DNA of 64,000 nucleotides from Amphiscolops sp. MND2022 (GCA_964187785.1 OZ076410.1:63736001-63800000); one strand, 5' to 3'. Shown: positions 3,375-47,500, counted from the stretch's first letter. Translations and numbers: made by a program. Notes: generated by a model not told the origin, from the letters alone.

Positions 3375-4587
3375 CCCAGTGATCGAAGCCATGGGACCCT
3401 TGCCAAGATCCATGGCAAGTTCCTTGCTAGCCTTGCCAAGATCTTGCCATGATCTTGCCATGATCTTGCCAAAGATACCATGGCCATGCAAGATCGTGCA
3501 AAGGCTAACCATGATTAACCATGATCTTGGCAAGGGTTCCATGGTACCATTACCGAAACTTTTGGAAAATTCAGAGCTCTTATTTTCAAATTGTAACTAA
3601 AAATTAATTCGGACCAAAAAACAGACATGTATAGGGTTAAACAGAAGAAAAACTGATACTCAAAGACATTAAAGGAAAAATGTTTTTGCTCCGACCATTA
3701 TAAATTTTTATTGCATTCTCGAACTTCAATAATTAGAACCCGTTACCTCAATGGATAAGGTAATAGCGTGATTTCCATAATTGTAAACAAATCATAGCTA
3801 GAAAAGTTGGTTTTCACACCGATATCACAAACCCGCCAGTTGCAATAACTTGATTCGGAGTTTGCTTTGTATGATAATTTATGATAGTACACCGTTTCCA
3901 CGTTGAATGAAGCACATCAGATATTAAATGAACAACCAATAGAAATTTATTAGCTTGCTACAGCAAATCTCAAATAATGTGAACGAAATCGTAGCTTGAA
4001 TGCAAGTAAAGTGTAGGCCAATGCAGCATACGATTTTGTGTACATGTAGCATTCTTTGGTCAGCGTTTGTTCAATTTGAAAGCGTCGTCGGTGATTGTTA
4101 TTTGCTAACTCACTTGGATGCTGATATTGTTCACTTGAATTCTGATTGTAAAGCAGTTTTACTTTGGTGGCAGGTGATTGGCTGAAAATATGGAACGGAA
4201 GCCGAGACGATTCACTTAAAATCTGATATGCTTCACTCAACGCGGAAACATTAGTAACAATGCCGTGCTCTCAAGTAACAAAACTCGGTCAATAAGTGCA
4301 GCAAATTTTCGATCAATAAATGTTATGTCAACAAATGTTATTACAATGGCTAATTCAAAAATTGAAGACGACAAGGACTTTTTGCGAAAAGAATAAGTTA
4401 TGCACAATTAATACTAGCTTACATGTGTTACCATGGTTATCTTGTCAAGATCTTGCCATGATCTTGCAATGATTTGCGTTCCATGTATCATGATTTGTGA
4501 TGATCTTGCCAAGGGTACCATGGTTAACCATGATTTAGCAAGATTTACCATGATCATGGCAACGGTTCCTTGGCTTCCAACACTGGG
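3375..4587. mobile_element. Non-autonomous EnSpm/CMC-like DNA transposon A
   Basis: Imperfect ~24-bp TIR (CCCAGTG..GAAGCCA.GG.ACC / ...CACTGGG), 2-bp TSD TC, and clustered subterminal CAAGATCTTG/CCATG repeats at both ends. Confidence 0.75.
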
Positions 4588-6289
4588 TCAGGTTTAATTC
4601 TGTCTTTTTTGGTAGTATACATACCCTCACAACCAGAGTTTTTCAGACACTTGTGACCAAAGTTTGTCTCAGAAAAAATTGTCTCAGAAACCAGACCAAC
4701 AACACTACTTGGTTTTCAGTTTATCTAATTTTGCAAAATGCCCGTCAGGATTTGGTCGAAAAAGGTGTCACCAGCTGAGATTTTCAATTTTTAGCCAATC
4801 TTCGGGTCGATAGAAAATCAGAATGAATGTGTCTTGGTAAGAGTACCAGCTATTGTAAAAACACCTGGTGACAGAAATCAGACAAATACACGTACAAAGT
4901 CTCTAATTAAGGCGACCGCAAAATTCAATAGGGGGATTTTTGGTTCCTATATGTGGCTCGTTAGCAAAGTAATAGACAGAAAACACCATGAAAAATTTTG
5001 AGCTGTTCTATGCGAAGTCAGTGTATGAATTTAGTTCTATGCTTATTCACCGAATCGAGAGAGGCGCACGAAGGCGCAACAGATTAACGCTCTACCTCAA
5101 GTCGTTTGAGATTTCTCACAGTGTCCGAAAACAGTCCAAAAGAAAACGCTTTGTGCTTTTTCTTCATTGAGAACAGTGAAAAACTGAAGTGCAACCAACT
5201 TTATGTAACAACGTTTCTACAGTGCGGTAAAAACGTGAGGAGGAGGACTCTGTGGGCATATAAGGAGCTTTTTTCTAACTACAATTATCCAAAAACCAGT
5301 AATTAAAATGGAAAGGCCGTTTGGCGTCATGAAGCTTTGCGATTCAAATGAAAGGAGTACCTTTCAAACATTTGATATTCTGTTATCAATTCGACCAGGT
5401 TGGAAACGAACGACGAAAAACCACAAGCATTTGCGTTTTTCTGCATATAGCGTGTACTAAATTGGGACACCTCAGTTTGGCAACTTTGGTCTTGAGGGGA
5501 AAAAGAATGTCAACATGACTCCGGGGAAGTTGGTTACTTCTTAAAAGAAGCACTGATTGGAAACATCATTACAGTTTTTAAAAACCAAAAAATGTGATTT
5601 TAGCTTGAGTTTTACAATTGCTATTTTCCACGATACTTTTTCATTTCATTAAGATTTTTACAAGGTCCCAAAAAAAATTTATGAAGGTTGAAGGTTAACT
5701 TAGTTTATCTAGTGCCATTAGGGTAAATTTGATTTTGAAAAGCTGCAAAAATGACGAGAAAGGAGGATTTCCACTCTTCACAAGTCCCCAATCTGAGCAC
5801 CAAATTGCGATAGCAACTGATAATGTACGGTCAAAAAACAATAAAAAGGTCGAAAACATGTTTCTTGTCTTTAAGGTAGTTATTCCTTGATGAAAGAAAT
5901 ATACGGCGGATTCTATATCTCGTTGTGTTGTAAAAAAGTAGCTTATTATTAAAGTAGAAGAAATATGGGACAACGATTCACCTAAATCCCGCAACTTTCA
6001 ACAACCACATAAGATTACATGAACAAAACATGACCAAACTTTTGGCTCAAAACATCAGGTTTCGAGATAGCAAAGAATATTTGAAACTACATTTTCCATT
6101 TAAAAAATTTATGAAAAGTAATATACATTGCAACAAAACATCCTCCGGGCCCGGAAAGATGTGAAGTAAAAACTCGAAAAGAAAAGCATTTTTAAAATCA
6201 ATTTCTGAAAACTTGTATCCAATGCTACTTGTTTTTGAGATACATGTTATCGATAGCAAAATGGGTAGACATTGGAAAAATACATCATT

Positions 6290-40289: not shown

Positions 40290-43200
40290 AGCCTTTTTAT
40301 GACATCTAGAAATGACCAAGATTTATAAATTTTATAGTCCTTAAAATTCCACCAATTTGAACGAAATTTCGGCACACTTGATTGTTTTCATGCGTCACTA
40401 CTTGGTCTCATCGGTTATTCCGTAATAGCCCTCAATTCGTGGCAATTCGTTAGTTTAGTAGCATGTTGCTTATAGCAGCAAATGTCTTAGTTACAAGTAC
40501 AATATTTGTCAGCAGGGAAAGTTTCTTAGAGCTTTATCTAGTTTACAAAAAAGTTTGTTTGAAAATTCTTCGATCCATACTACTGAAAATGTTAGAAAAT
40601 GCAAATTAAAAAATTTATTATTGAAATTTGAGTTTTTTCGAAAATTCAGTAGAATATAATTGAACTTTTTGGATTTTTACCATCAGGAGACTCGCTATAA
40701 TCTCCCGAACCAACTGAATTGTTTTGATCGAGGTTTGTGTTTCGAATCAGAAAAAATGCACTATATTTTGTGTCTATGAGCTCTGAAGTTTATGCACTAA
40801 GGAAGGCTATAAAAATTGTATTTGGAAAATTGATGATTTTCATTTGAAATCAAAAACGGGACCATGTCATCTATTTCCCCCCAAACTGCTGCGGGGAGAA
40901 ATAAGACAGAAGGTTCAAATACCATTATGTCGACATCGTTTGCGTTGAAATTTTGGTCCAATAAAATAATTGATGTCGACATAATCTTATCCATTACATC
41001 GACTGTCAGTTAAAAGTTGCTAAAGTAAGGTGAAGAATAGGTTCTAAGAATGAATTTAAAATCAATGTAGCTCAACAGTATCGGCTAAAGTTTTTAAACA
41101 ACTGTATAGCATCGATATCAAAGTGTAACTGTATAGTAATTACATGACTTCAGTGTAAGATGGGTGGCAGGTAGTTTTATGTCCTTAGTTCGGAGAACTA
41201 CTACTTTGACATTGACAGATTGACATATCAGTGTCAGTGTCACATTCCCTCCTCCGTGATGTTCAAGGGAACCAGCTCTGCGATGGCTAGTAGTTTCTGA
41301 TGCGAGGAAAGGGCGTGATGGGATACTTCCTCGGAACGGTGAAGGTGAAAGCGTTTCCTAAATGAACCATGGTTAGAAATATTCGACACCGCCCAACTTA
41401 ACTACTCTCTTCGCCGCTCTTATTCTTTCGGACCTACGTGGTTCTAGGTTTGAATCGAATGAATTACTTTCGTCCCTAGTATTTTGTTTTAGCCGTGTTT
41501 TACCTGTGTGGTCTTGGTCTGTTGCTTCGGCGTTGGGCATGTTTTGGCCGCGAATCGGCGTTCCGAATTCGTCCGGTGGTGTCGCGTCGGTAGTCTGGGG
41601 TATTTCGGTGCTGCAGCCGATAGGAGATGTCAGCATTGGTGTTTGTGACCGTAGTCGCTCTACTTCCCGGTCTATCGCCTCCTTTAGTGTGGCGTCTTCG
41701 GTAACATCTTCCTCTTCTGAGGTGTCATTGTCTGCGTATTGGCTGGTCGATTCCGAGCCGTGGCTAGAAGAATCGTACATAACCACTCGGTTGTACGGTC
41801 GTTTCTTTTTCGCTGGCATTGTTGGCATCGCGGTGTGGCTAGTGCTGGGTTCATTGTTATTGTCGTCTTGCCTGGTGGTCTCCAGCCGTAGGTGCGTTTC
41901 ACACAGCTCACCGCTACTAAATTTTCCACATCTGCGGCATCGGTTTGTGGGTTTTCTCCGATCCTCGGGTTTTCTTGATGTCTGAAAATTCAGGGGCTTT
42001 GATGCCAATTTTTTATGTCTTATCCTCCCTTCGAAGGTAGTTATTGTATGTCCTGTTTCGGCTACCGCTGTTAAGATTTTTTTTGTTTTAAAACCACATT
42101 TCATGGAATTTGGTTTATTCTTTTTCTTTGTTTCGTTGAGGACCAGGTAGTCCGCCATCTCTCCTTCTGCGTCGTTTATTGTGACTACTTGGAGTTTTGT
42201 CGGTTGGGCTGAAATATAATTGGTTAGTGTTCTCCTCCAATTAGACAACAGACATTCCGGCTTATCTATCAAGTTGGTTAGAGCAATGCGCGGCTTTCTG
42301 CCTAAATGCATCTGAAAAGGTGTCGTTTTCAGTCGGCTGTGTGGCGTTTGTCTAATTGTTTTTTCGCTAATTGCACGCTTTCTTCAAAACTCAAGCCGTC
42401 TGCCATGTTTGCTCTAGTAAGTGATTTAATTGTCCGTATTAATCTCTCGACTAAGCCGGTACCGGTGTGTAAATTGGGCGTACACCTTATCCATTTGATA
42501 TTTTGGCCGTCACAAAATTGTTTGAATTCATTACTTTTGAAGCAACTTCCATTGTCGGTTCGAATAACCCGTGGTGTTCCGTTGTCCGTAAAATATCTCG
42601 TTAAAAATTTTAGGACGGTCCGTGCGTCCGTACTTTTACAAATGTGTGCGGTGGGCCATTTGCTAAAACGGTCAACAGCTTCTAAAATATATGTGTCACC
42701 GCGTGTTTTCGATTTAATTGGACCGGCGAAGTCCAATTGGATTTCTTGATTCGGTTCGGTTAAAATCTCGAGATTGTTTTTTTTTCGTGGATGGGATTTG
42801 AGTAGTAATATTCTTACCTGCGGCTCTGCAGCTTGGGCATGATTCGGCCTTTTCTTGAATCTCACGGTTCATTCCAGGCCACCAGAAAGCTTGTGCTATC
42901 TGCTCCATTTTTCCGGCCGACGCGTGTCCGTGATGCAGCATAGCGATAATCGTTGTGCGCATGTTCTCCGGAATTACAATTTTATCATTATAGAACAGTA
43001 ATCCAAATCTTGTGGATAAGTGCGAGCGATGTGGGTGATAAGGGTAGAAGATACTGTCTAGTTGTTGATTTTCAATGGCGGCGATGGCGTTTAATATCTT
43101 TATGTCTCGTGCTGTTTCGTCTACGAGGAGAGGAAGGTCTAGGGCGAAGTCTTTCTCCGCTTTTTTGATTGCTTCCTCGGTATTGTCGTTCTGGTCGGAG

Positions 43201-43833
43201 CTGAGTGAATTTTTCTTTGCCGTCTGTTTGAGTCTAATTAAATTCACAGTCTCATGTTTCTTGAATTTTTTAAAGGCATTTGTTGGGCATTTATCGTTTT
43301 TCGTCCGGCTAGTCTCACTGTCCCCGTCTGATTGGTTGCTGTGTAGCCAGAATTCGTTATTGTTTGGTTGGTATTCCAACAGGGGTGTCGTTCCGATCGT
43401 TTCACAGTAGTGGAAAAAGCGGTTGTAAATTTCGACGTTGAGTTCCACTATTCTTTTTCTGCTGTCCTGGTTTGGCCGATATTCTTGTATGCGCTCGCTC
43501 TCCTTTCCTTTTCCGACGATTCTCGTCCGGTCTGGTTTTAGCAGATAATTTCTTTGAATCCACAGGCGTTTAGTCTCCGGGGAATGGCCTCTTTTCTTGT
43601 GTATGAAGTTCATGTCAATGCCGTTGACTTTGTCCATTTTTGAGTTGGAAAGTTTGCAGTTTATAGCGTTAATGCTAGTTGACGGCGGTGAGGTTTTGAA
43701 CAAATGAGTGCTTGGATTTTGTTCGCGAACATTTTTATCGCGTTGTGATTGGTTGAGATTTTCTCTCGTGTTTAGTTGTTCGGTAAATCGTTTCATGCTT
43801 CCTCGCTCTTGGTTGAACTCAAATAAGCCGTAT

Positions 43834-44572
43834 GTTCTTCTTCTTTTTAGCTTTCACCACCCATTCTGGGGGTACGCTCTCCTCTCGGTTGGCCTCGGCA
43901 AGTGTTCCTATGTCAAGCCAGGTTCGTGGCGGAAATGGGTATGGTGCAATTGGGACATTCCGTGTATTTGGCTTTATATTTCCTTGCTGGGGGCAAAGTT
44001 ACGGGGGATTATGTTGGTTGGCATCTTTTTCTGTGTCTCGCGAAGTTTTTCCGTGACAGTGACTTGTTGCATGATGTACAGGTTCTGTGTGTCTCCGATG
44101 AATGTTCCCCGTTACATGACTTCTGGTGGTTTGTCCGTGTGTTTTCCGTCTTAAAAATTCTAGTGCAGCTTGGGCAGGGAAAGAGGACAGGTTCTTTCTT
44201 GTTATGTATTCTTTTCGTGTGGATACCCAATCCAGCGGCAGTTCGGCACGTTTTCCCGCATTGTGAGCATGTGAGGGACTGCTAAGATTTGGGGAAATTT
44301 CTGGTTTCACCGTTTCCAACTTCCTGGCTATTATCGTGCCTGTGTGGCGGGCACTTGCCGAAACGGGTCCAAGAGGGCCCTCGCCGTCAAGTTTGTTGAA
44401 GAGGTGCTTTGGTTGGCTAGACCATTGCCACTCTGTTGGCTTCCGGGAGGTGGCTTCATGGATCCTTACGGCTCCTTGGAAGTTCTTTTTCCGGCGCCCC
44501 TGTGTGTTCCTTGACGCACAAGACATGCTGTGCGCGGCCCACTTGCGCCACGTAGGAGGCGACACACTCCGC
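43834..44572 (-). mobile_element. Short non-autonomous non-LTR retroposon (5' ribozyme, zinc-finger frame, A/GAA tail)
   Basis: 9-bp TSD ATACGGCTT (43825-43833 and 44573-44581), 3' tail TAAAAAGAAGAAGAAC. Removing it restores ...QIYGLFEFN, matching QIYGLFQFN in the related element at ~105-130. Confidence 0.92.
43847..44425 (-). pseudogene. 193-codon single frame with four zinc fingers (1 CCHH, 3 CCHC) and five internal stops
   Basis: CSQCGKTCRTAAGLGIHTKRIH, CPSCTRIFKTENTRTNHQKSC, CTSCNKSLSRKNFARHRKRC and CPNCTIPISATNLA*HRNTC lie in one frame with no frameshift. Confidence 0.8.
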
Positions 44573-44576
44573 AAGC
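44502..44576 (-). ncRNA. HDV-like self-cleaving ribozyme (predicted)
   Basis: P1 GCUUGC/GCAAGU, P2 GUGUGUC/GAACACAC (1-nt bulge), P3 GCC/GGC, L3 UCCUACGU, P1.1 CC/GG, P4 GCGCACA/UGUGCGU, J4/2 CAAG. All parts are in HDV order. Confidence 0.8.
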
Positions 44577-47500
44577 CGTATATTTGATTGATGACGAACT
44601 CTTCGTCGGCTTCCGCTTCGTCTTGTCCGTCCGCTTTATTTTCCAGTTCGGCGATTTCGGTCGGTACGATCGGATGACGGCTTAAGTAGTCCGTTAGCGG
44701 AATGTTTTTGCCGGCCGTGTATTGGATATTGACGTCGAAATGGCTCAGTCTATCCAGCCAACGAGTTAAGCGTGCGCTATATTGTTTATGTGCCCGGTTC
44801 TTTTTCAGTAATGGTTGCAATGCCTGGTGATCTGTCAACAAATTTACTCTTTTACCGTAGACGTAATATTTAAAGTGTTCTAATCCCCATAAAGCTCCCA
44901 ACAATTCTAATTCGTTTATCGCGTATTGTTTCTCGCAATCGGTTAAAAATCTGCTAGCGAAAGCTACGGGTCTAAATACTACACCTTCTTTTTGCCACAA
45001 AGTCGCACCCAGTCCGGTGTTACAAGCATCGGTTGTAATGTAGTTGTCTCTTTTTGGGTCGAAATGGGCCAAGCATGGTGCTTCTGTGATCTCCTTCTTT
45101 AGTTTTTCGAAATCTTCGTCTACTTCTGCTGTCCATTCTCATTTGACGTCTGTCTTCAGTAATTTCCTCATTCGATCGGTTTTCTTGGATAGGTTGTTGA
45201 TAAATTTGGATAGATGTTGTATGGAGCCGAGGAAAGATTGTAGCTCCTTTACATTCTTCGGTGCGGTTAATTTGGTTATCGCTTCTGTTTTGTCTTTATT
45301 TGGCTTTACGCCGCTTTGATTGATGAAGTAGCCGAGCCAGGTTAGTTCTTTCTTGAACAACTCCGTCTTCGTTTCACTTGCTCGGTAGCCGGCGTTCTGC
45401 AATTTTAAGAGGACTTCTCGTACTTCTTTCTCGTGGTCTTCGATACTGCCATTAGTTACGCAAATAATATCATCGAACCAGACTGGGGTTTTGAATTCTA
45501 GCACGCTATCGATGTGTTCTTGGAATACCGTTGGAATATCTGATAGTCCGTAGAAGACTTTCTTGAAGCGATAGTGACCGGTGAAGTCTCCACCGATAAT
45601 TGAAAATATGCAGTGTTTAGCTGCTTCTTTGGACAGTCTTGCCTGGCCGTAGGCGTAGTCCAAGTCTATGTTCGACATCCAAATTTCGCCTTCGCCGTTG
45701 GTTATTTTGGCGGAAATTTTACTGATTAGTTCTTAAGTATTTGGCATTGCAGCTTTTCGCTTTATGCATGCTTCGTTAAGCTTCTGGAATCCAATGCGAT
45801 TTTGACCGATTTGTCCTTTTTGATGGTGATGACTGCGGGAGAAATGAAGCAATTTTCTGTGGTTTCGTCAGCTTTTTCGATATGTCCCGATTTGATAAGT
45901 TTCTCTAGTTCTTCTCGGACATTTTTCTGGAAATGTATGGGAACGGGTCGTCCCTTTTGTTGTATGGGCTTGATGTCTTTCTTCAACTGAATATCGATCG
46001 TTAGATCTTTTATTGTGCGGTTGTTTTTGAATAAGTCTTCATGTTCGCTAATGATTTTCTTTCGTCTCTCGTCTTCTTCTACGTGGCGGATCACATTCGT
46101 CTTTTTGCCGCCTTGTAGGCCGATTTCCAGTTTGTCCAACCAATCCAATCCCAAAAATGGTTGCGTATTTTTGTTTTCTGTGATAAGGATAGGCAGGGTT
46201 TCTTTGTTTTTTTCTGTCTTTACTTCTACCATTGCCTCGCTCTTGAATTTGATGGGATTTTTATTCACGTCGACGAAGATTTTTGTTGTTTCTTTCATTT
46301 CTTTTGGTGTGATAATTGGAGGCATAATCGTCACGGGTGAGCCGGTGTCGATGATGAATTCTATTGGTTGGCCATGGACAAATAGGATTGTTTTGTAAAA
46401 GTCGACTCGGTTCACTCCGTTGACGGACTGAATATGGTCAATTTCCGGCCATGGTTCGGTGCTGCTATCCGATGAAGCCACTTTTTTAATCCGACTGACG
46501 GTTTTGGATTTACATACCTTGGTGAAGTGTCCCATCTTCTTGCAGTTATTGCATTGGGCCTTCCGTGCCGGACAAACGTGTTCCATTGACCAGTTTGGTT
46601 TTCCGCAGAAGCGGCAATCGCGGTTTGAAAATTTCTTTTTCTCGGTAAAATTTGTTTTGCGTTTCCGTGACTGGTTGGTGTGACCGATCAATTCGGTGGA
46701 TGTCGAGCTGTTTGATGAATCTTTTCTGGCTTTTTTGGTTTTCGTTTTCTTGTCCCCGTATTTTCGGTTGTAGTTATCGAGTTCATTCGTCTCAAGGACC
46801 AGTTTTATCTTCAGAGGGCCGTTTATGAATTTATCGCGGGCTCTTTTGTCTCTGATGGTAGAGGCGAATTTATATGCGATAATTTCTTCTGCTGTGATGT
46901 TACCGAAGTCGCACTTTCTTTCAATGTCCACTAGTCTTTTCCAATATTCATCCAGTGTTTCAGTGTCTTCCTGCTTCATGTTGAAAATTTGCGCTCTACT
47001 GTGGAATACGTTCCTCACTGGAAGGAAGGTTTTCTTGAATAGTGTCAATACTTCGGGTAGTTGGACGTCTTTCAGTTCACAGCCCTATTGGCCTCTCATA
47101 ATTTCATGTTTGGCTTTCAGCTCGAGTGCCCAGATAACATCGCCTTTTATGTGGTAGACTGTGTGTGGGTCCATGTATTCTACACCTTCGTCAATGATTT
47201 CGTCCAGATTGCGGTTGTATGTCAAATGGATGTATTCCGAAAATTGTTCCCACCACATCTTTGGGTTGATTTTAGTGAGATCCGTTTCTCTATCCGATAA
47301 AATCGGAATTTTGTATCTACTTTTTTCCATCCGTTCTGACGTTGTTGTTCGATTGTTGTTTGTTCTGGTTGATTGTTCCGATAAATTCGGTTCACCCTCC
47401 GTTGAGTTGAAGTTGGTGTTGCTGTTTTCCATTGTTCGAATTGCCTACTGCGCCATAAAGTAAGGTGAAGAATAGGTTCTAAGAATGAGTTTAAAATCAA

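What the first reader, a model, noticed from the sequence alone, without database searches (positions are those of the whole stretch)
43834..44576. RT-less mini-retroposon: HDV-like ribozyme, four zinc fingers and a GAA tail
Seen: a 739-bp insert with a 9-bp TSD whose first ~75 nt fit all HDV helices (P1, P1.1, P2, P3, P4, catalytic-position C). A single frame with four zinc fingers follows and ends exactly at an A/GAA tail. The predicted G1 (44576) lies inside the TSD, implying 4-5 nt of microhomology at the 5' junction. Known: HDV-like ribozymes form the 5' ends of R2, RTE and L1Tc/ingi elements, and internally deleted non-autonomous derivatives exist (R2 SIDEs, NARTc/RIME). Inference: this is a 5'-complete, self-processing parasite of an unseen LINE that retains a DNA-binding ZF module. 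Finger 1 (GLGIHTKRIH) looks R2/RTE-like.
Basis: partly seen in the sequence, partly recalled or inferred. Interest (0 to 1): 0.85.

Follow-up and report, generated by a model that had tools for sequence, protein, structure and literature searches.

The report
Deleted LINE copy with HDV-like ribozyme
This is one broken, internally shortened copy of a 3.9-kb jumping gene (a LINE) whose first 75 bases fold like the self-cutting hepatitis-delta RNA; its full-length relatives end in four zinc fingers and land about 17 bases beside GAC/GAT-type triplet repeats.

Summary
A 739-bp insert with a target-site duplication sits in the pol gene of an LTR retrotransposon, and more than 20 paralogous empty sites confirm the insertion.

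Its first 75 nt fit the HDV double pseudoknot. Across 36 related 5' ends, 91% of pair cells are paired and 19 of 25 pairs show compensatory changes. Independent full-length copies begin exactly at the predicted G1. Cleavage itself is untested.

- The "unseen LINE" is present in this genome. It is a ~3.93-kb single-ORF element with APE, RT and four C-terminal zinc fingers, and its stop codon abuts the (GAA)n tail.
- The window copy is a one-off internal deletion of that element. Its junction is unique in the genome.
- The finger frame carries three stops and is out of frame with the 5' ORF. This is a dead copy, not an amplifying RT-less family.

New points:
- The clade is large. It occurs in marine metagenomes, in Symsagittifera roscoffensis, and at protein level in Branchiostoma belcheri.
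- It inserts 15-19 bp downstream of (GAN)3 or longer runs, and the run end is most often 31 nt before G1.
- Finger 4 keeps an invariant Asn(+3)/Arg(+6), the canonical GAN-reading pair. This suggests, but does not show, finger-guided targeting.

The closest known analogue is L1Tc/NARTc.

The parts
44573..44584 (-). 5' copy of the target-site duplication. The perfect 9 nt ATACGGCTT are at 44573-44581. The last 4 nt (GCTT) are ambiguous with the element's first 4 nt.
   Evidence: Empty sites in paralogous LTR elements overlap by 12 nt.
44502..44576 (-). HDV-like ribozyme fold, nt 1-75 of the element. Helices: P1 44571-44576/44541-44546; P2 44561-44567/44502-44509; P3 44558-44560/44547-44549; L3 44550-44557; P1.1 CC (44555-44556) with GG (44539-44540); P4 44514-44535. 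J4/2 is CAAG at 44510-44513, with the candidate catalytic C at 44513. This copy has G where the family has A at the last J4/2 position.
   Evidence: Covariance model R1 scores 82.2 bits, E = 1e-21. Full-length copies start at G1. Coordinates were checked.
44524..44526 (-). ATG inside the P4 loop, in the frame that runs on into APE/RT in family-A full-length copies.
   Evidence: Its use as an initiator is inference only.
44308..44501 (-). Remnant of the 5' coding region of the LINE (element nt 76-269).
   Evidence: 95-97% identical to nt 1-275 of the full-length copies L031-L036.
44307..44308 (-). Internal deletion junction. It removes about 3.19 kb (APE, RT and linker) and has a 2-nt (TG) microhomology. 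It is unique in the genome.
43850..44307 (-). C-terminal coding remnant with four zinc fingers: ZF1 (C2H2) 44204-44269; ZF2 (C2HC) 44114-44176; ZF3 (C2HC) 44021-44080; ZF4 (C2HC) 43898-43957. In-frame stops lie at 44282-44284, 44009-44011 and 43913-43915.
43835..43849 (-). ORF stop TAA followed directly by the A/(GAA)3 tail. There is no 3' UTR.
   Evidence: The tail has 2-7 GAA units in other copies.
43825..43836 (-). 3' copy of the target-site duplication (perfect 9 nt at 43825-43833).
44599..44607 (-). GACGAAGAG, an in-phase GAN run in the target. It ends 22 nt before G1 and about 14-17 nt before the TSD. This is the family's preferred upstream target motif.
   Evidence: The same motif and spacing appear in 22 of 30 other insertions and in 5'-truncated copies.
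42714..45072 (-). Host: the pol ORF of an LTR retrotransposon, interrupted between the RT-RNase H domain and the integrase zinc-binding domain. The LINE lies in the same orientation.
   Evidence: Pfam RT_RNaseH 1.6e-28 and Integrase_H2C2 9.3e-12.

Best explanation
Window 43834-44576 (minus strand) is a single dead copy of a ~3.93-kb APE-type LINE, called family A here. It has lost about 3.19 kb of its interior.

The intact element works as follows.
- A single ORF of about 1,260-1,290 aa encodes a basic N-terminal stretch, an APE endonuclease, a reverse transcriptase and four C-terminal zinc fingers. It ends in the first bases of a (GAA)n tail.
- The first ~75 nt of the RNA fold into an HDV-type double pseudoknot. 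This is inferred to cut the transcript just 5' of G1. The element could then be read through from any upstream promoter and still yield RNA with an exact 5' end.
- Insertion is by target-primed reverse transcription. The bottom strand is nicked 15-19 bp downstream of a run of GAN triplets, mostly GAC/GAT. The cDNA is copied to the RNA's 5' end. The upstream junction is sealed at G1, in this copy through 4 nt of microhomology. A 9-19-bp duplication results.

Shown here: the anatomy, the parent family, the uniqueness of the deletion, the covariation of the fold, the coincidence of 5' ends with G1, and the target preference.

Inferred: self-cleavage, how translation starts, and which protein part reads the GAN run.

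Not decidable here: whether the interior was lost during reverse transcription (template switch) or after integration.
For: Parent and deletion.
- Query nt 1-275 and 268-742 lie 3.4-4.1 kb apart in about 10 places, at 95-98% identity.
- Full-length copies carry Exo_endo_phos_2 and RVT_1 followed by C2H2 fingers.
- The junction is unique in the genome.
- Other copies have different internal deletions.

Ribozyme.
- Independent full-length copies of three families share no sequence upstream of G1, and their TSDs abut G1.
- A covariance model built on P2, P3 and P4 finds 36 5' ends in the held loci and at least 55 in the genome. Many of the genome hits lie 100-800 nt upstream of APE-coding matches on the same strand.
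- On that alignment 91.4% of cells pair, 19 of 25 pairs change on both sides, 0 of 500 shuffles reach this, and slid controls pair at 25-55%.
- P1, which was not part of the model, pairs at 87% with 5 of 6 pairs compensatory.
- The J4/2 C is invariant in the 10-sequence seed alignment. By my reading of the 36-row alignment it changes only in the degenerate copy L070.
- Rfam's HDV-F-prausnitzii model aligns end to end with one family member, in the right register but below threshold (26.2 bits).
- The same fold sits upstream of a homologous RT gene in Symsagittifera roscoffensis (57.8 bits).

Insertion.
- Empty sites confirm the insertion.
- 22 of 30 upstream flanks hold at least 3 in-phase GAN triplets, against 3.4% of controls, and the run most often ends at -31.
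- 5'-truncated copies keep the run 15-18 nt before the TSD.
- Near-identical elements (99.3%) sit at the same position of paralogous repeats that are only 67-73% or 90-94% alike.
Against: - No cleavage assay was done, and no RNA 5'-end data could be obtained. The public runs served were contigs and behaved like DNA.
- Rfam gives no hit for the window copy at E <= 10.
- Plain MFE folding shows no signal (z = 0.46). This is expected for a pseudoknot.
- P1 is 6 bp here rather than the classical 7.
- The window copy has a G in place of the family's A in J4/2 and may itself be inactive.
- A 5' end at G1 would also be produced by an internal promoter starting there, as in L1Tc Pr77.
- All family-A copies examined carry stops or frameshifts. 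Uninterrupted ORFs were seen only in the sister family B.
Confidence: 0.85

Rival explanations
1. This is a member of an RT-less, non-autonomous mini-retroposon family, comparable to SIDE, NARTc or RIME. It is mobilised in trans by a LINE and keeps a working zinc-finger DNA-binding module.
For: Both termini of the LINE are kept and the copy is flanked by a TSD at a typical target. Ribozyme-bearing clades are the ones known to give bipartite non-autonomous derivatives (PMC5786205). A second TSD-flanked 0.8-kb bipartite copy with other breakpoints exists on contig C4.
Against: The deletion junction occurs once in 1.07 Gb, with all 37 candidates scored. The finger frame has three stops and is out of frame with the 5' ORF. 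The C4 copies multiplied by tandem segmental duplication with identical flanks, not by retroposition.
Confidence: 0.04
2. The conserved 5' fold is not a self-cleaving ribozyme. It is a structured 5' leader with another role, such as an internal promoter, a translation element or a recognition site for the element's protein.
For: Activity is untested. In L1Tc the same 77 nt act as both promoter and ribozyme (PMC3383444), so roles can overlap. A conserved GGAAAAGGA motif and, in families A and B and the S. roscoffensis copy, an ATG follow the fold closely. There is no Rfam hit above threshold.
Against: All five HDV helices co-vary, including the two pseudoknot helices P1 and P1.1 that were not modelled. 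The L3/P3/P1.1 core and the J4/2 C are conserved as in HDV. This combination is specific to the HDV active-site architecture.
Confidence: 0.08
3. The zinc fingers are a general nucleic-acid chaperone or RNA-binding module, as in L1Tc C2-L1Tc. In this reading the preference for sites beside GAN runs comes from the APE domain, DNA shape or chromatin, not from the fingers.
For: The C-terminal C2H2 fingers of L1Tc bind nucleic acids without sequence specificity and act as a chaperone (PMC5814959). Pfam's best finger hit is the dsRNA-binding zf-C2H2_jaz type. ZF1 has no base-reading residues, and only ZF1-ZF2 have a near-canonical linker. In other target-specific APE LINEs the endonuclease gives the specificity (my own knowledge).
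Against: An APE nicks where it binds, but here the motif lies 15-19 bp from the nick at a fixed distance. ZF4 keeps Asn(+3) and Arg(+6) in 13 of 13 lineages, and ZF3 in most. These are the residues of the engineered GAA and GAT modules (PMC9705829 table 2). The fold matches DNA-bound finger arrays best.
Confidence: 0.4

Closest known systems
L1Tc / NARTc and ingi / RIME (Ingi clade, trypanosomes)
   Same: - A single ORF with an N-terminal AP endonuclease, RT and C-terminal CX2CX12HX3-5H fingers.
- An HDV-like ribozyme in the first ~77 nt.
- TSD-flanked copies with a conserved motif upstream of the insertion site.
- Shortened partners that keep the element's 5' end (the first 77 nt are shared by L1Tc and NARTc).
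Sources: PMC3185411, PMC3383444 and PMC5814959.
   Different: - No RNase H domain was detected.
- There are four fingers (one C2H2 and three C2HC) instead of two.
- The tail is a short tandem repeat ((GAA)n or lineage-specific 5-7-mers) instead of poly(A).
- The target motif is a GAN run.
- The hosts are marine animals.
- Here the shortened copy is unique, whereas NARTc and RIME are abundant families.
- RT phylogeny was not tested.
Vingi clade (compact single-ORF APE LINEs related to Ingi)
   Same: A compact single ORF, no RNase H, and internally deleted non-autonomous derivatives are reported (PMC5786205 and PMC13708176).
   Different: Vingi is described as inserting without site specificity. 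PMC5786205 does not list Vingi among the six clades known to have 5' ribozymes. Membership could not be tested because no reference Vingi sequences were available.
R2 and its SIDE derivatives
   Same: A 5' HDV-like ribozyme releases the element from a co-transcript. 5' junctions form by microhomology when cleavage is at the element's end (PMC3774820). Zinc fingers take part in target recognition, and internally deleted derivatives exist.
   Different: [quoted passage not shown] This element has an N-terminal APE and C-terminal fingers, and its copies are dispersed.
RTE clade
   Same: A short single-ORF APE+RT element with almost no 3' UTR, microsatellite-like tails, predicted HDV-like ribozymes and bipartite derivatives (PMC5786205). 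The nearest named protein hit outside the clade carries the automatic name 'Craniofacial development protein 2', which in my recollection marks RTE/BovB-type ORFs (22-24% identity, E = 1e-22).
   Different: The ORF is about 250-300 aa longer, with a conserved four-finger C-terminus. Identity to that hit is only 22-24%. There is a strong target-site preference.
HDV / HDV-like ribozyme families in Rfam (RF00094, RF00622, RF01787, RF01788, RF02682)
   Same: The same helix order. The P3-L3 core reads GCC-UCCnnnnU-GGC, followed by P1' and GG. A C lies in J4/2, and G1-U closes P1.
   Different: No Rfam model reaches its threshold. P1 is 6 bp in families A to C. P2 carries a conserved one-base bulge.

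Membership tests
HDV-like self-cleaving ribozyme | Nested double pseudoknot with P1, P1.1, P2, P3 and P4 in the canonical order. | tested here: met
   On 36 homologous 5' ends, 91.4% of cells pair and 19 of 25 pairs change on both sides. Slid controls pair at 25-55%.
HDV-like self-cleaving ribozyme | Cytosine in J4/2 and the conserved L3/P3/P1.1 core. | tested here: met
   C64, C18-C19, T20-C22, G28-G29 and G38 are invariant in alignment A1. By my reading of the 36-row alignment, the C changes only in the degenerate copy L070.
HDV-like self-cleaving ribozyme | Cleavage immediately 5' of the first P1 nucleotide. | tested here: inconclusive
   Genomic 5' ends and TSDs of independent copies coincide with G1. 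This is indirect, because a promoter starting at G1 would give the same result.
HDV-like self-cleaving ribozyme | Self-scission activity that depends on the J4/2 C and a divalent metal. | not testable with these tools
   This needs in vitro transcription and cleavage assays.
HDV-like self-cleaving ribozyme | Match to a curated Rfam HDV-type model. | tested here: not met
   No hit at E <= 10 for the window. The only hit is sub-threshold: RF02682 on L069, 26.2 bits against a gathering score of 44. Rfam holds few HDV-like families.
Amplifying bipartite non-autonomous LINE derivative (SIDE, NARTc, RIME, Vingi-N type) | Keeps the 5' and 3' termini of an autonomous partner. | tested here: met
   Element nt 1-269 and the last ~470 nt are 95-98% identical to full-length copies.
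Amplifying bipartite non-autonomous LINE derivative (SIDE, NARTc, RIME, Vingi-N type) | Several dispersed copies share the same deletion, showing mobilisation in trans. | tested here: not met
   The junction is unique among all 37 scored candidates in the genome.
APE-type non-LTR retrotransposon (LINE) | APE endonuclease and RT in one ORF, TSDs, 5' truncations and a 3' repeat tail. | tested here: met
   Pfam domains, TSDs of 9-19 bp, 5'-truncated copies and variable (GAA)n tails.
Ingi / Vingi clades | Placement of the RT domain within the clade by phylogeny. | not tested
   No reference Ingi or Vingi sequences could be obtained. Only the architectural resemblance was assessed.
R2 clade | C-terminal restriction-like endonuclease and N-terminal ZF/Myb domains. 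| tested here: not met
   The endonuclease is an N-terminal Exo_endo_phos_2 domain and the fingers are C-terminal.

The most novel reading that the evidence does not exclude
This widespread marine-animal LINE clade is a zinc-finger-guided, site-selective APE retrotransposon. The conserved C-terminal C2HC fingers ZF3 and ZF4 carry Asn(+3) and Arg(+6). They would read GAN triplets and place the APE nick a fixed 15-19 bp downstream. The HDV-like ribozyme then lets the promoter-less insert be released from whatever transcript crosses it. If so, this would be a naturally modular protein-DNA targeting device on a compact single-ORF APE LINE.
Probability: 0.4. Interest if true: 0.75.

Novelty: new variant of a known kind. 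Interest (0 to 1): 0.5.

Why it matters
The window copy itself is ordinary debris. It leads, however, to a large and apparently undescribed LINE clade that is abundant in marine metagenomes and present in an acoel.

The clade combines three things usually discussed separately:
- a 5' HDV-like ribozyme that no Rfam model captures;
- a conserved four-finger C-terminus;
- a measurable insertion preference at a fixed distance from GAN triplet runs.

It widens the known range of HDV-like ribozymes in retrotransposons. It gives a metazoan counterpart to the trypanosome L1Tc architecture. It also offers a testable case of how an APE-type LINE might gain site selectivity through a separate DNA-reading module. 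That question bears on current efforts to use compact LINEs as gene-insertion tools.

Tried and rejected
- Rfam scan of the region at E <= 10 found no HDV family, only a chance snoRNA hit.
- Plain MFE folding of nt 1-92 gave z = 0.46. This is uninformative for a pseudoknot.
- My own strict HDV descriptor hit only element 5' ends in 263 kb of loci. It also gives about 1 hit per 190 kb in shuffles and one likely chance hit at window 2225, so it is not evidence on its own.
- RNA 5'-end evidence could not be obtained. The look-up of sequencing runs returned one seawater metatranscriptome with a tiny share and four runs of unknown kind kept as contigs. When laid on L033 they behaved like low-coverage DNA and showed no starts or ends.
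- I tested whether the GAN run marks acidic-codon repeats of host genes, so that insertion in sense orientation traps a promoter. The GAN frame is the longest open frame upstream in only 13 of 28 sites and the medians are equal. This is not supported.
- I tested whether the GAN preference comes from pairing of the (GAA)n tail with the target, and rejected it. Relatives with (AGGAC)n, (TGAAG)n, (CAAGGAC)n or (TCAAGGT)n tails keep the upstream GAN run. The run also lies upstream of the nick, not at the primer.
- The Branchiostoma belcheri locus (L084) has a homologous RT gene fragment but no ribozyme hit. It is probably 5'-truncated.
- The ribozymes in L045 and L079 are atypical: a shifted P1, and a 24-nt L3 that looks like a duplication. 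They were kept in the counts but not interpreted.
- The Kojima 2011 Vingi paper and the Ruminski 2011 paper are not held.
- Clade assignment by RT phylogeny was not possible.
- Earlier scan notes held nothing on this element.

Full report
**What is in the window.**
- On the minus strand, 44573-44581 and 43825-43833 are identical (ATACGGCTT) and enclose 739 bp.
- The surrounding ORFs belong to the pol gene of an LTR retrotransposon, also on the minus strand. RT_RNaseH lies upstream of the insert and Integrase_H2C2 downstream.
- I searched the genome with the insert plus 300 nt on each side. In at least 20 paralogous LTR elements (90-99% identical) the two flanks are adjacent and overlap by 12 nt, for example C5:29813013-29813316 with 29813305-29813607.
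- So the insertion is real, and the duplicated target is AA(T/C)ATACGGCTT.
- The uninterrupted target already ends in GCTT, which is also the element's first four bases.

**It is an internally deleted copy of a LINE that is present in the genome.**
- The insert matches end to end only itself. In about ten other places its nt 1-275 and 268-742 lie 3.4-4.1 kb apart at 95-98% identity.
- These full-length copies measure about 3,920 nt from G1 to the stop codon.
- They encode Exo_endo_phos_2 (APE) and RVT_1, followed by zinc fingers. No RNase H is detected.
- The junction in the window is at 44307/44308. It joins element nt ~269 to nt ~3,461 with a 2-nt TG microhomology.
- A 100-nt probe across the junction finds only the window. 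All 37 candidates were scored, and the other 36 match one side only.
- Other family members have different internal deletions. Relative to L033 these are 1-643 + 3751-3924 on contig C4, 1-242 + 2350 onwards in L040, and a gap at 1779-2221 in L038.
- The window copy is therefore one of several individually damaged copies, not a member of an amplified RT-less family.
- Whether the interior was lost by template switching during reverse transcription or after integration cannot be told.

**The zinc fingers.**
- In intact relatives such as P0001 (1,261 aa, family B) the ORF ends with four fingers: ZF1 CX2CX12HX4H, ZF2 CX2CX12HX3C, and ZF3 and ZF4 CX2CX11HX3C. Ten to 25 residues and the stop follow.
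- In the window all four lie in one frame (44204-44269, 44114-44176, 44021-44080, 43898-43957). The stop TAA (43847-43849) runs straight into AAAGAAGAAGAA.
- That frame has stops at 44282-44284, 44009-44011 and 43913-43915, and it is out of frame with the 5' ORF across the deletion.
- The module is thus a coding remnant. It is present because the LINE has no 3' UTR, so any copy that keeps the 3' end keeps the fingers.
- The array is conserved across the clade at 38-61% identity.
- AlphaFold models four beta-beta-alpha fingers with mean pLDDT 84.
- The best structural and sequence matches are DNA-bound finger arrays (CTCF, Aart, ZBTB7A). R2 proteins rank further down.

**The HDV-like fold.**
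- By hand the first 75 nt give: P1 GCTTGC/GCAAGT (G1-U36); P2 GTGTGTC/GAACACAC with one bulged A; P3 GCC/GGC; L3 TCCTACGT, whose CC pairs with the GG after P1 (P1.1); a 7-bp P4; and J4/2 CAAG beginning with the candidate catalytic C.
- Independent full-length copies of family A share no similarity upstream of G1. Their TSDs abut it, for example AAAACATGTTTTT, TAAAATGAGA, CTGAAGTTTATC and TTTAAGTTGATT.
- The genome holds sister families: B at 58-61% amino-acid identity, with uninterrupted 1,289-codon frames; C at ~44%; and others.
- Homologous 1,200-1,500-aa proteins sit on ~4-5-kb marine metagenome contigs.
- Their 5' ends carry the same architecture with different helix sequences. P2 is, for example, GGTGTTC/GAACACC, GAGGGGA/TCCTCTC, GCTTGT/ACAAGC or GATGCGA/TCGCATC. 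P1 is GCTTTC/GAAAGC or CCTTGC/GCAAGG. P3 is ACC/GGT.
- I built a covariance model (P2, P3 and P4 only) from 10 of these. It finds 36 5' ends in the held loci, with the window at 82.2 bits.
- It also finds at least 55 in the genome. Many of these lie 100-800 nt upstream of APE-coding matches on the same strand.
- On the resulting alignment the full double pseudoknot gives 91.4% paired cells. Nineteen of 25 pairs change on both sides, no shuffle out of 500 reaches the observed values, and slid controls pair at 25-55%.
- P1 was not in the model. It is 87% paired, with compensatory changes in 5 of 6 pairs.
- The J4/2 C is invariant in the seed alignment and, by my reading, changes only in one degenerate copy.
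- Rfam gives nothing for the window. Its HDV-F-prausnitzii model aligns full length and in register with one family member, below threshold.
- I conclude that this is a genuine HDV-type fold. Catalysis remains inferred. The window copy carries a G for A in J4/2 and may be inactive.

- Upstream flanks of 22 of 30 insertions hold at least three in-phase GAN triplets within 70 nt. These cover families A, B and C and the metagenome relatives. Controls give 3.4%.
- The triplets are mostly GAC/GAT, and the run most often ends exactly 31 nt before G1.
- The S. roscoffensis copy has GACGAT ending 31 nt before its G1.
- In 5'-truncated copies the run ends 15-18 nt before the TSD, so it is positioned relative to the first-strand nick.
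- Elements 99.3% identical sit at the same position of paralogous repeats that are only 67-73% alike (L033/L034) or 90-94% alike (L005/L011, with different truncation points). This indicates repeated independent hits on the same site.
- The window insertion fits this pattern, with GACGAAGAG at 44599-44607.
- Tails differ among lineages: (GAA)n, (AGGAC)n, (TGAAG)n, (CAAGGAC)n and (TCAAGGT)n. The GAN run stays, so tail-target pairing is not the cause.
- ZF4 keeps Asn at helix position +3 and Arg at +6 in all 13 aligned lineages, and ZF3 does so in most.
- Engineered fingers of the form xxxNLVR are the GAA and GAT modules (PMC9705829 table 2).
- That the fingers read the GAN run is therefore a specific, testable hypothesis, not a result. 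The alternative is a chaperone role, as shown for the L1Tc C-terminal fingers (PMC5814959).

**Comparison with known systems.**
- HDV-like ribozymes at LINE 5' ends are established for R2, R1, R4, RTE, Ingi and LOA. Bipartite non-autonomous derivatives are reported for RTE, Ingi, Vingi and R2 (PMC5786205).
- Junction formation by microhomology when cleavage is at the element's end is described for R2 (PMC3774820).
- The nearest architectural analogue is L1Tc. It has a single ORF with AP endonuclease, RT, RNase H and C-terminal C2H2 fingers, a ribozyme in the first 77 nt, a conserved motif upstream of insertions, and the shortened partner NARTc.
- The present clade differs in several ways: no RNase H, four fingers, short-tandem-repeat tails, the GAN-run target, and animal hosts.
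- It is not R2-like. The endonuclease is an N-terminal APE.
- The nearest named protein outside the clade carries a name I associate with RTE-type ORFs, at 22-24% identity.
- Clade placement by phylogeny was not possible.

**Verdict.** The object in the window is a dead, one-off deletion derivative. The interest lies in its parent clade: a new HDV-like ribozyme family outside Rfam, a conserved four-finger C-terminus, and a fixed-distance preference for GAN runs.

Noticed in passing
L033:579-600, L046:1490-1500, L085:3265-3285 and equivalents: A conserved GGAAAAGGA(A) motif lies 5-20 nt after the ribozyme's last helix in nearly all lineages. In family B and the S. roscoffensis copy the ATG follows directly, at about +100. 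It could be a translation-start or protein-binding signal.
   Followed up: no
window 44524-44526; L032-L035 5' ends: Compared with family B, family A has a frame change in the first ~50 codons. In family A the frame that continues into APE/RT is open through the ribozyme and contains an ATG in the P4 loop. The ATG homologous to family B's start (about +118) opens only a 42-codon frame in the window copy.
   Followed up: partly
L033:166-495 and 4456-4785 (G000 C8:691812-692141 and 696102-696431): The sequence flanking the L033 insertion (and, in diverged form, L034) reaches k-mer depths of 1e5 to 5e5, against about 60 for single-copy DNA in the same runs. It is an extremely abundant, satellite-like repeat, and it carries the GAAGATGAC target motif.
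   Followed up: partly
G000 C4:11202735-11218001 (L041, L042): Four tandem units of 4.7-4.9 kb each contain the same TSD-flanked 0.8-kb internally deleted family-A copy (element 1-643 + 3751-3924). The flanks are identical, so this is a segmental tandem duplication rather than retroposition.
   Followed up: partly
L044:1-190: Three tandem ~60-nt repeats lie directly upstream of the ribozyme of a metagenome relative.
   Followed up: no
L076, L077, L078, L079 3' ends: Relatives have short 3' UTRs of 18-45 nt ending in lineage-specific tandem repeats of 5-7 nt instead of (GAA)n.
   Followed up: partly
L079:190-215 (also L080): One lineage with an intact ORF has a 24-nt L3 that looks like an internal duplication (TCCCAGC...TCCCAGTCG). 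It is unclear whether that ribozyme can still fold.
   Followed up: no
window 2225 (minus strand): A second match to my hand-made HDV descriptor, with an AT-only P3 and a 5-nt L3. It is consistent with the chance rate seen in shuffles.
   Followed up: partly
run X1 on L033:825-1014: A seawater metatranscriptome holds a 195-nt contig that is 92% identical to the APE-coding part of family A. This hints that a close relative is transcribed in plankton.
   Followed up: no
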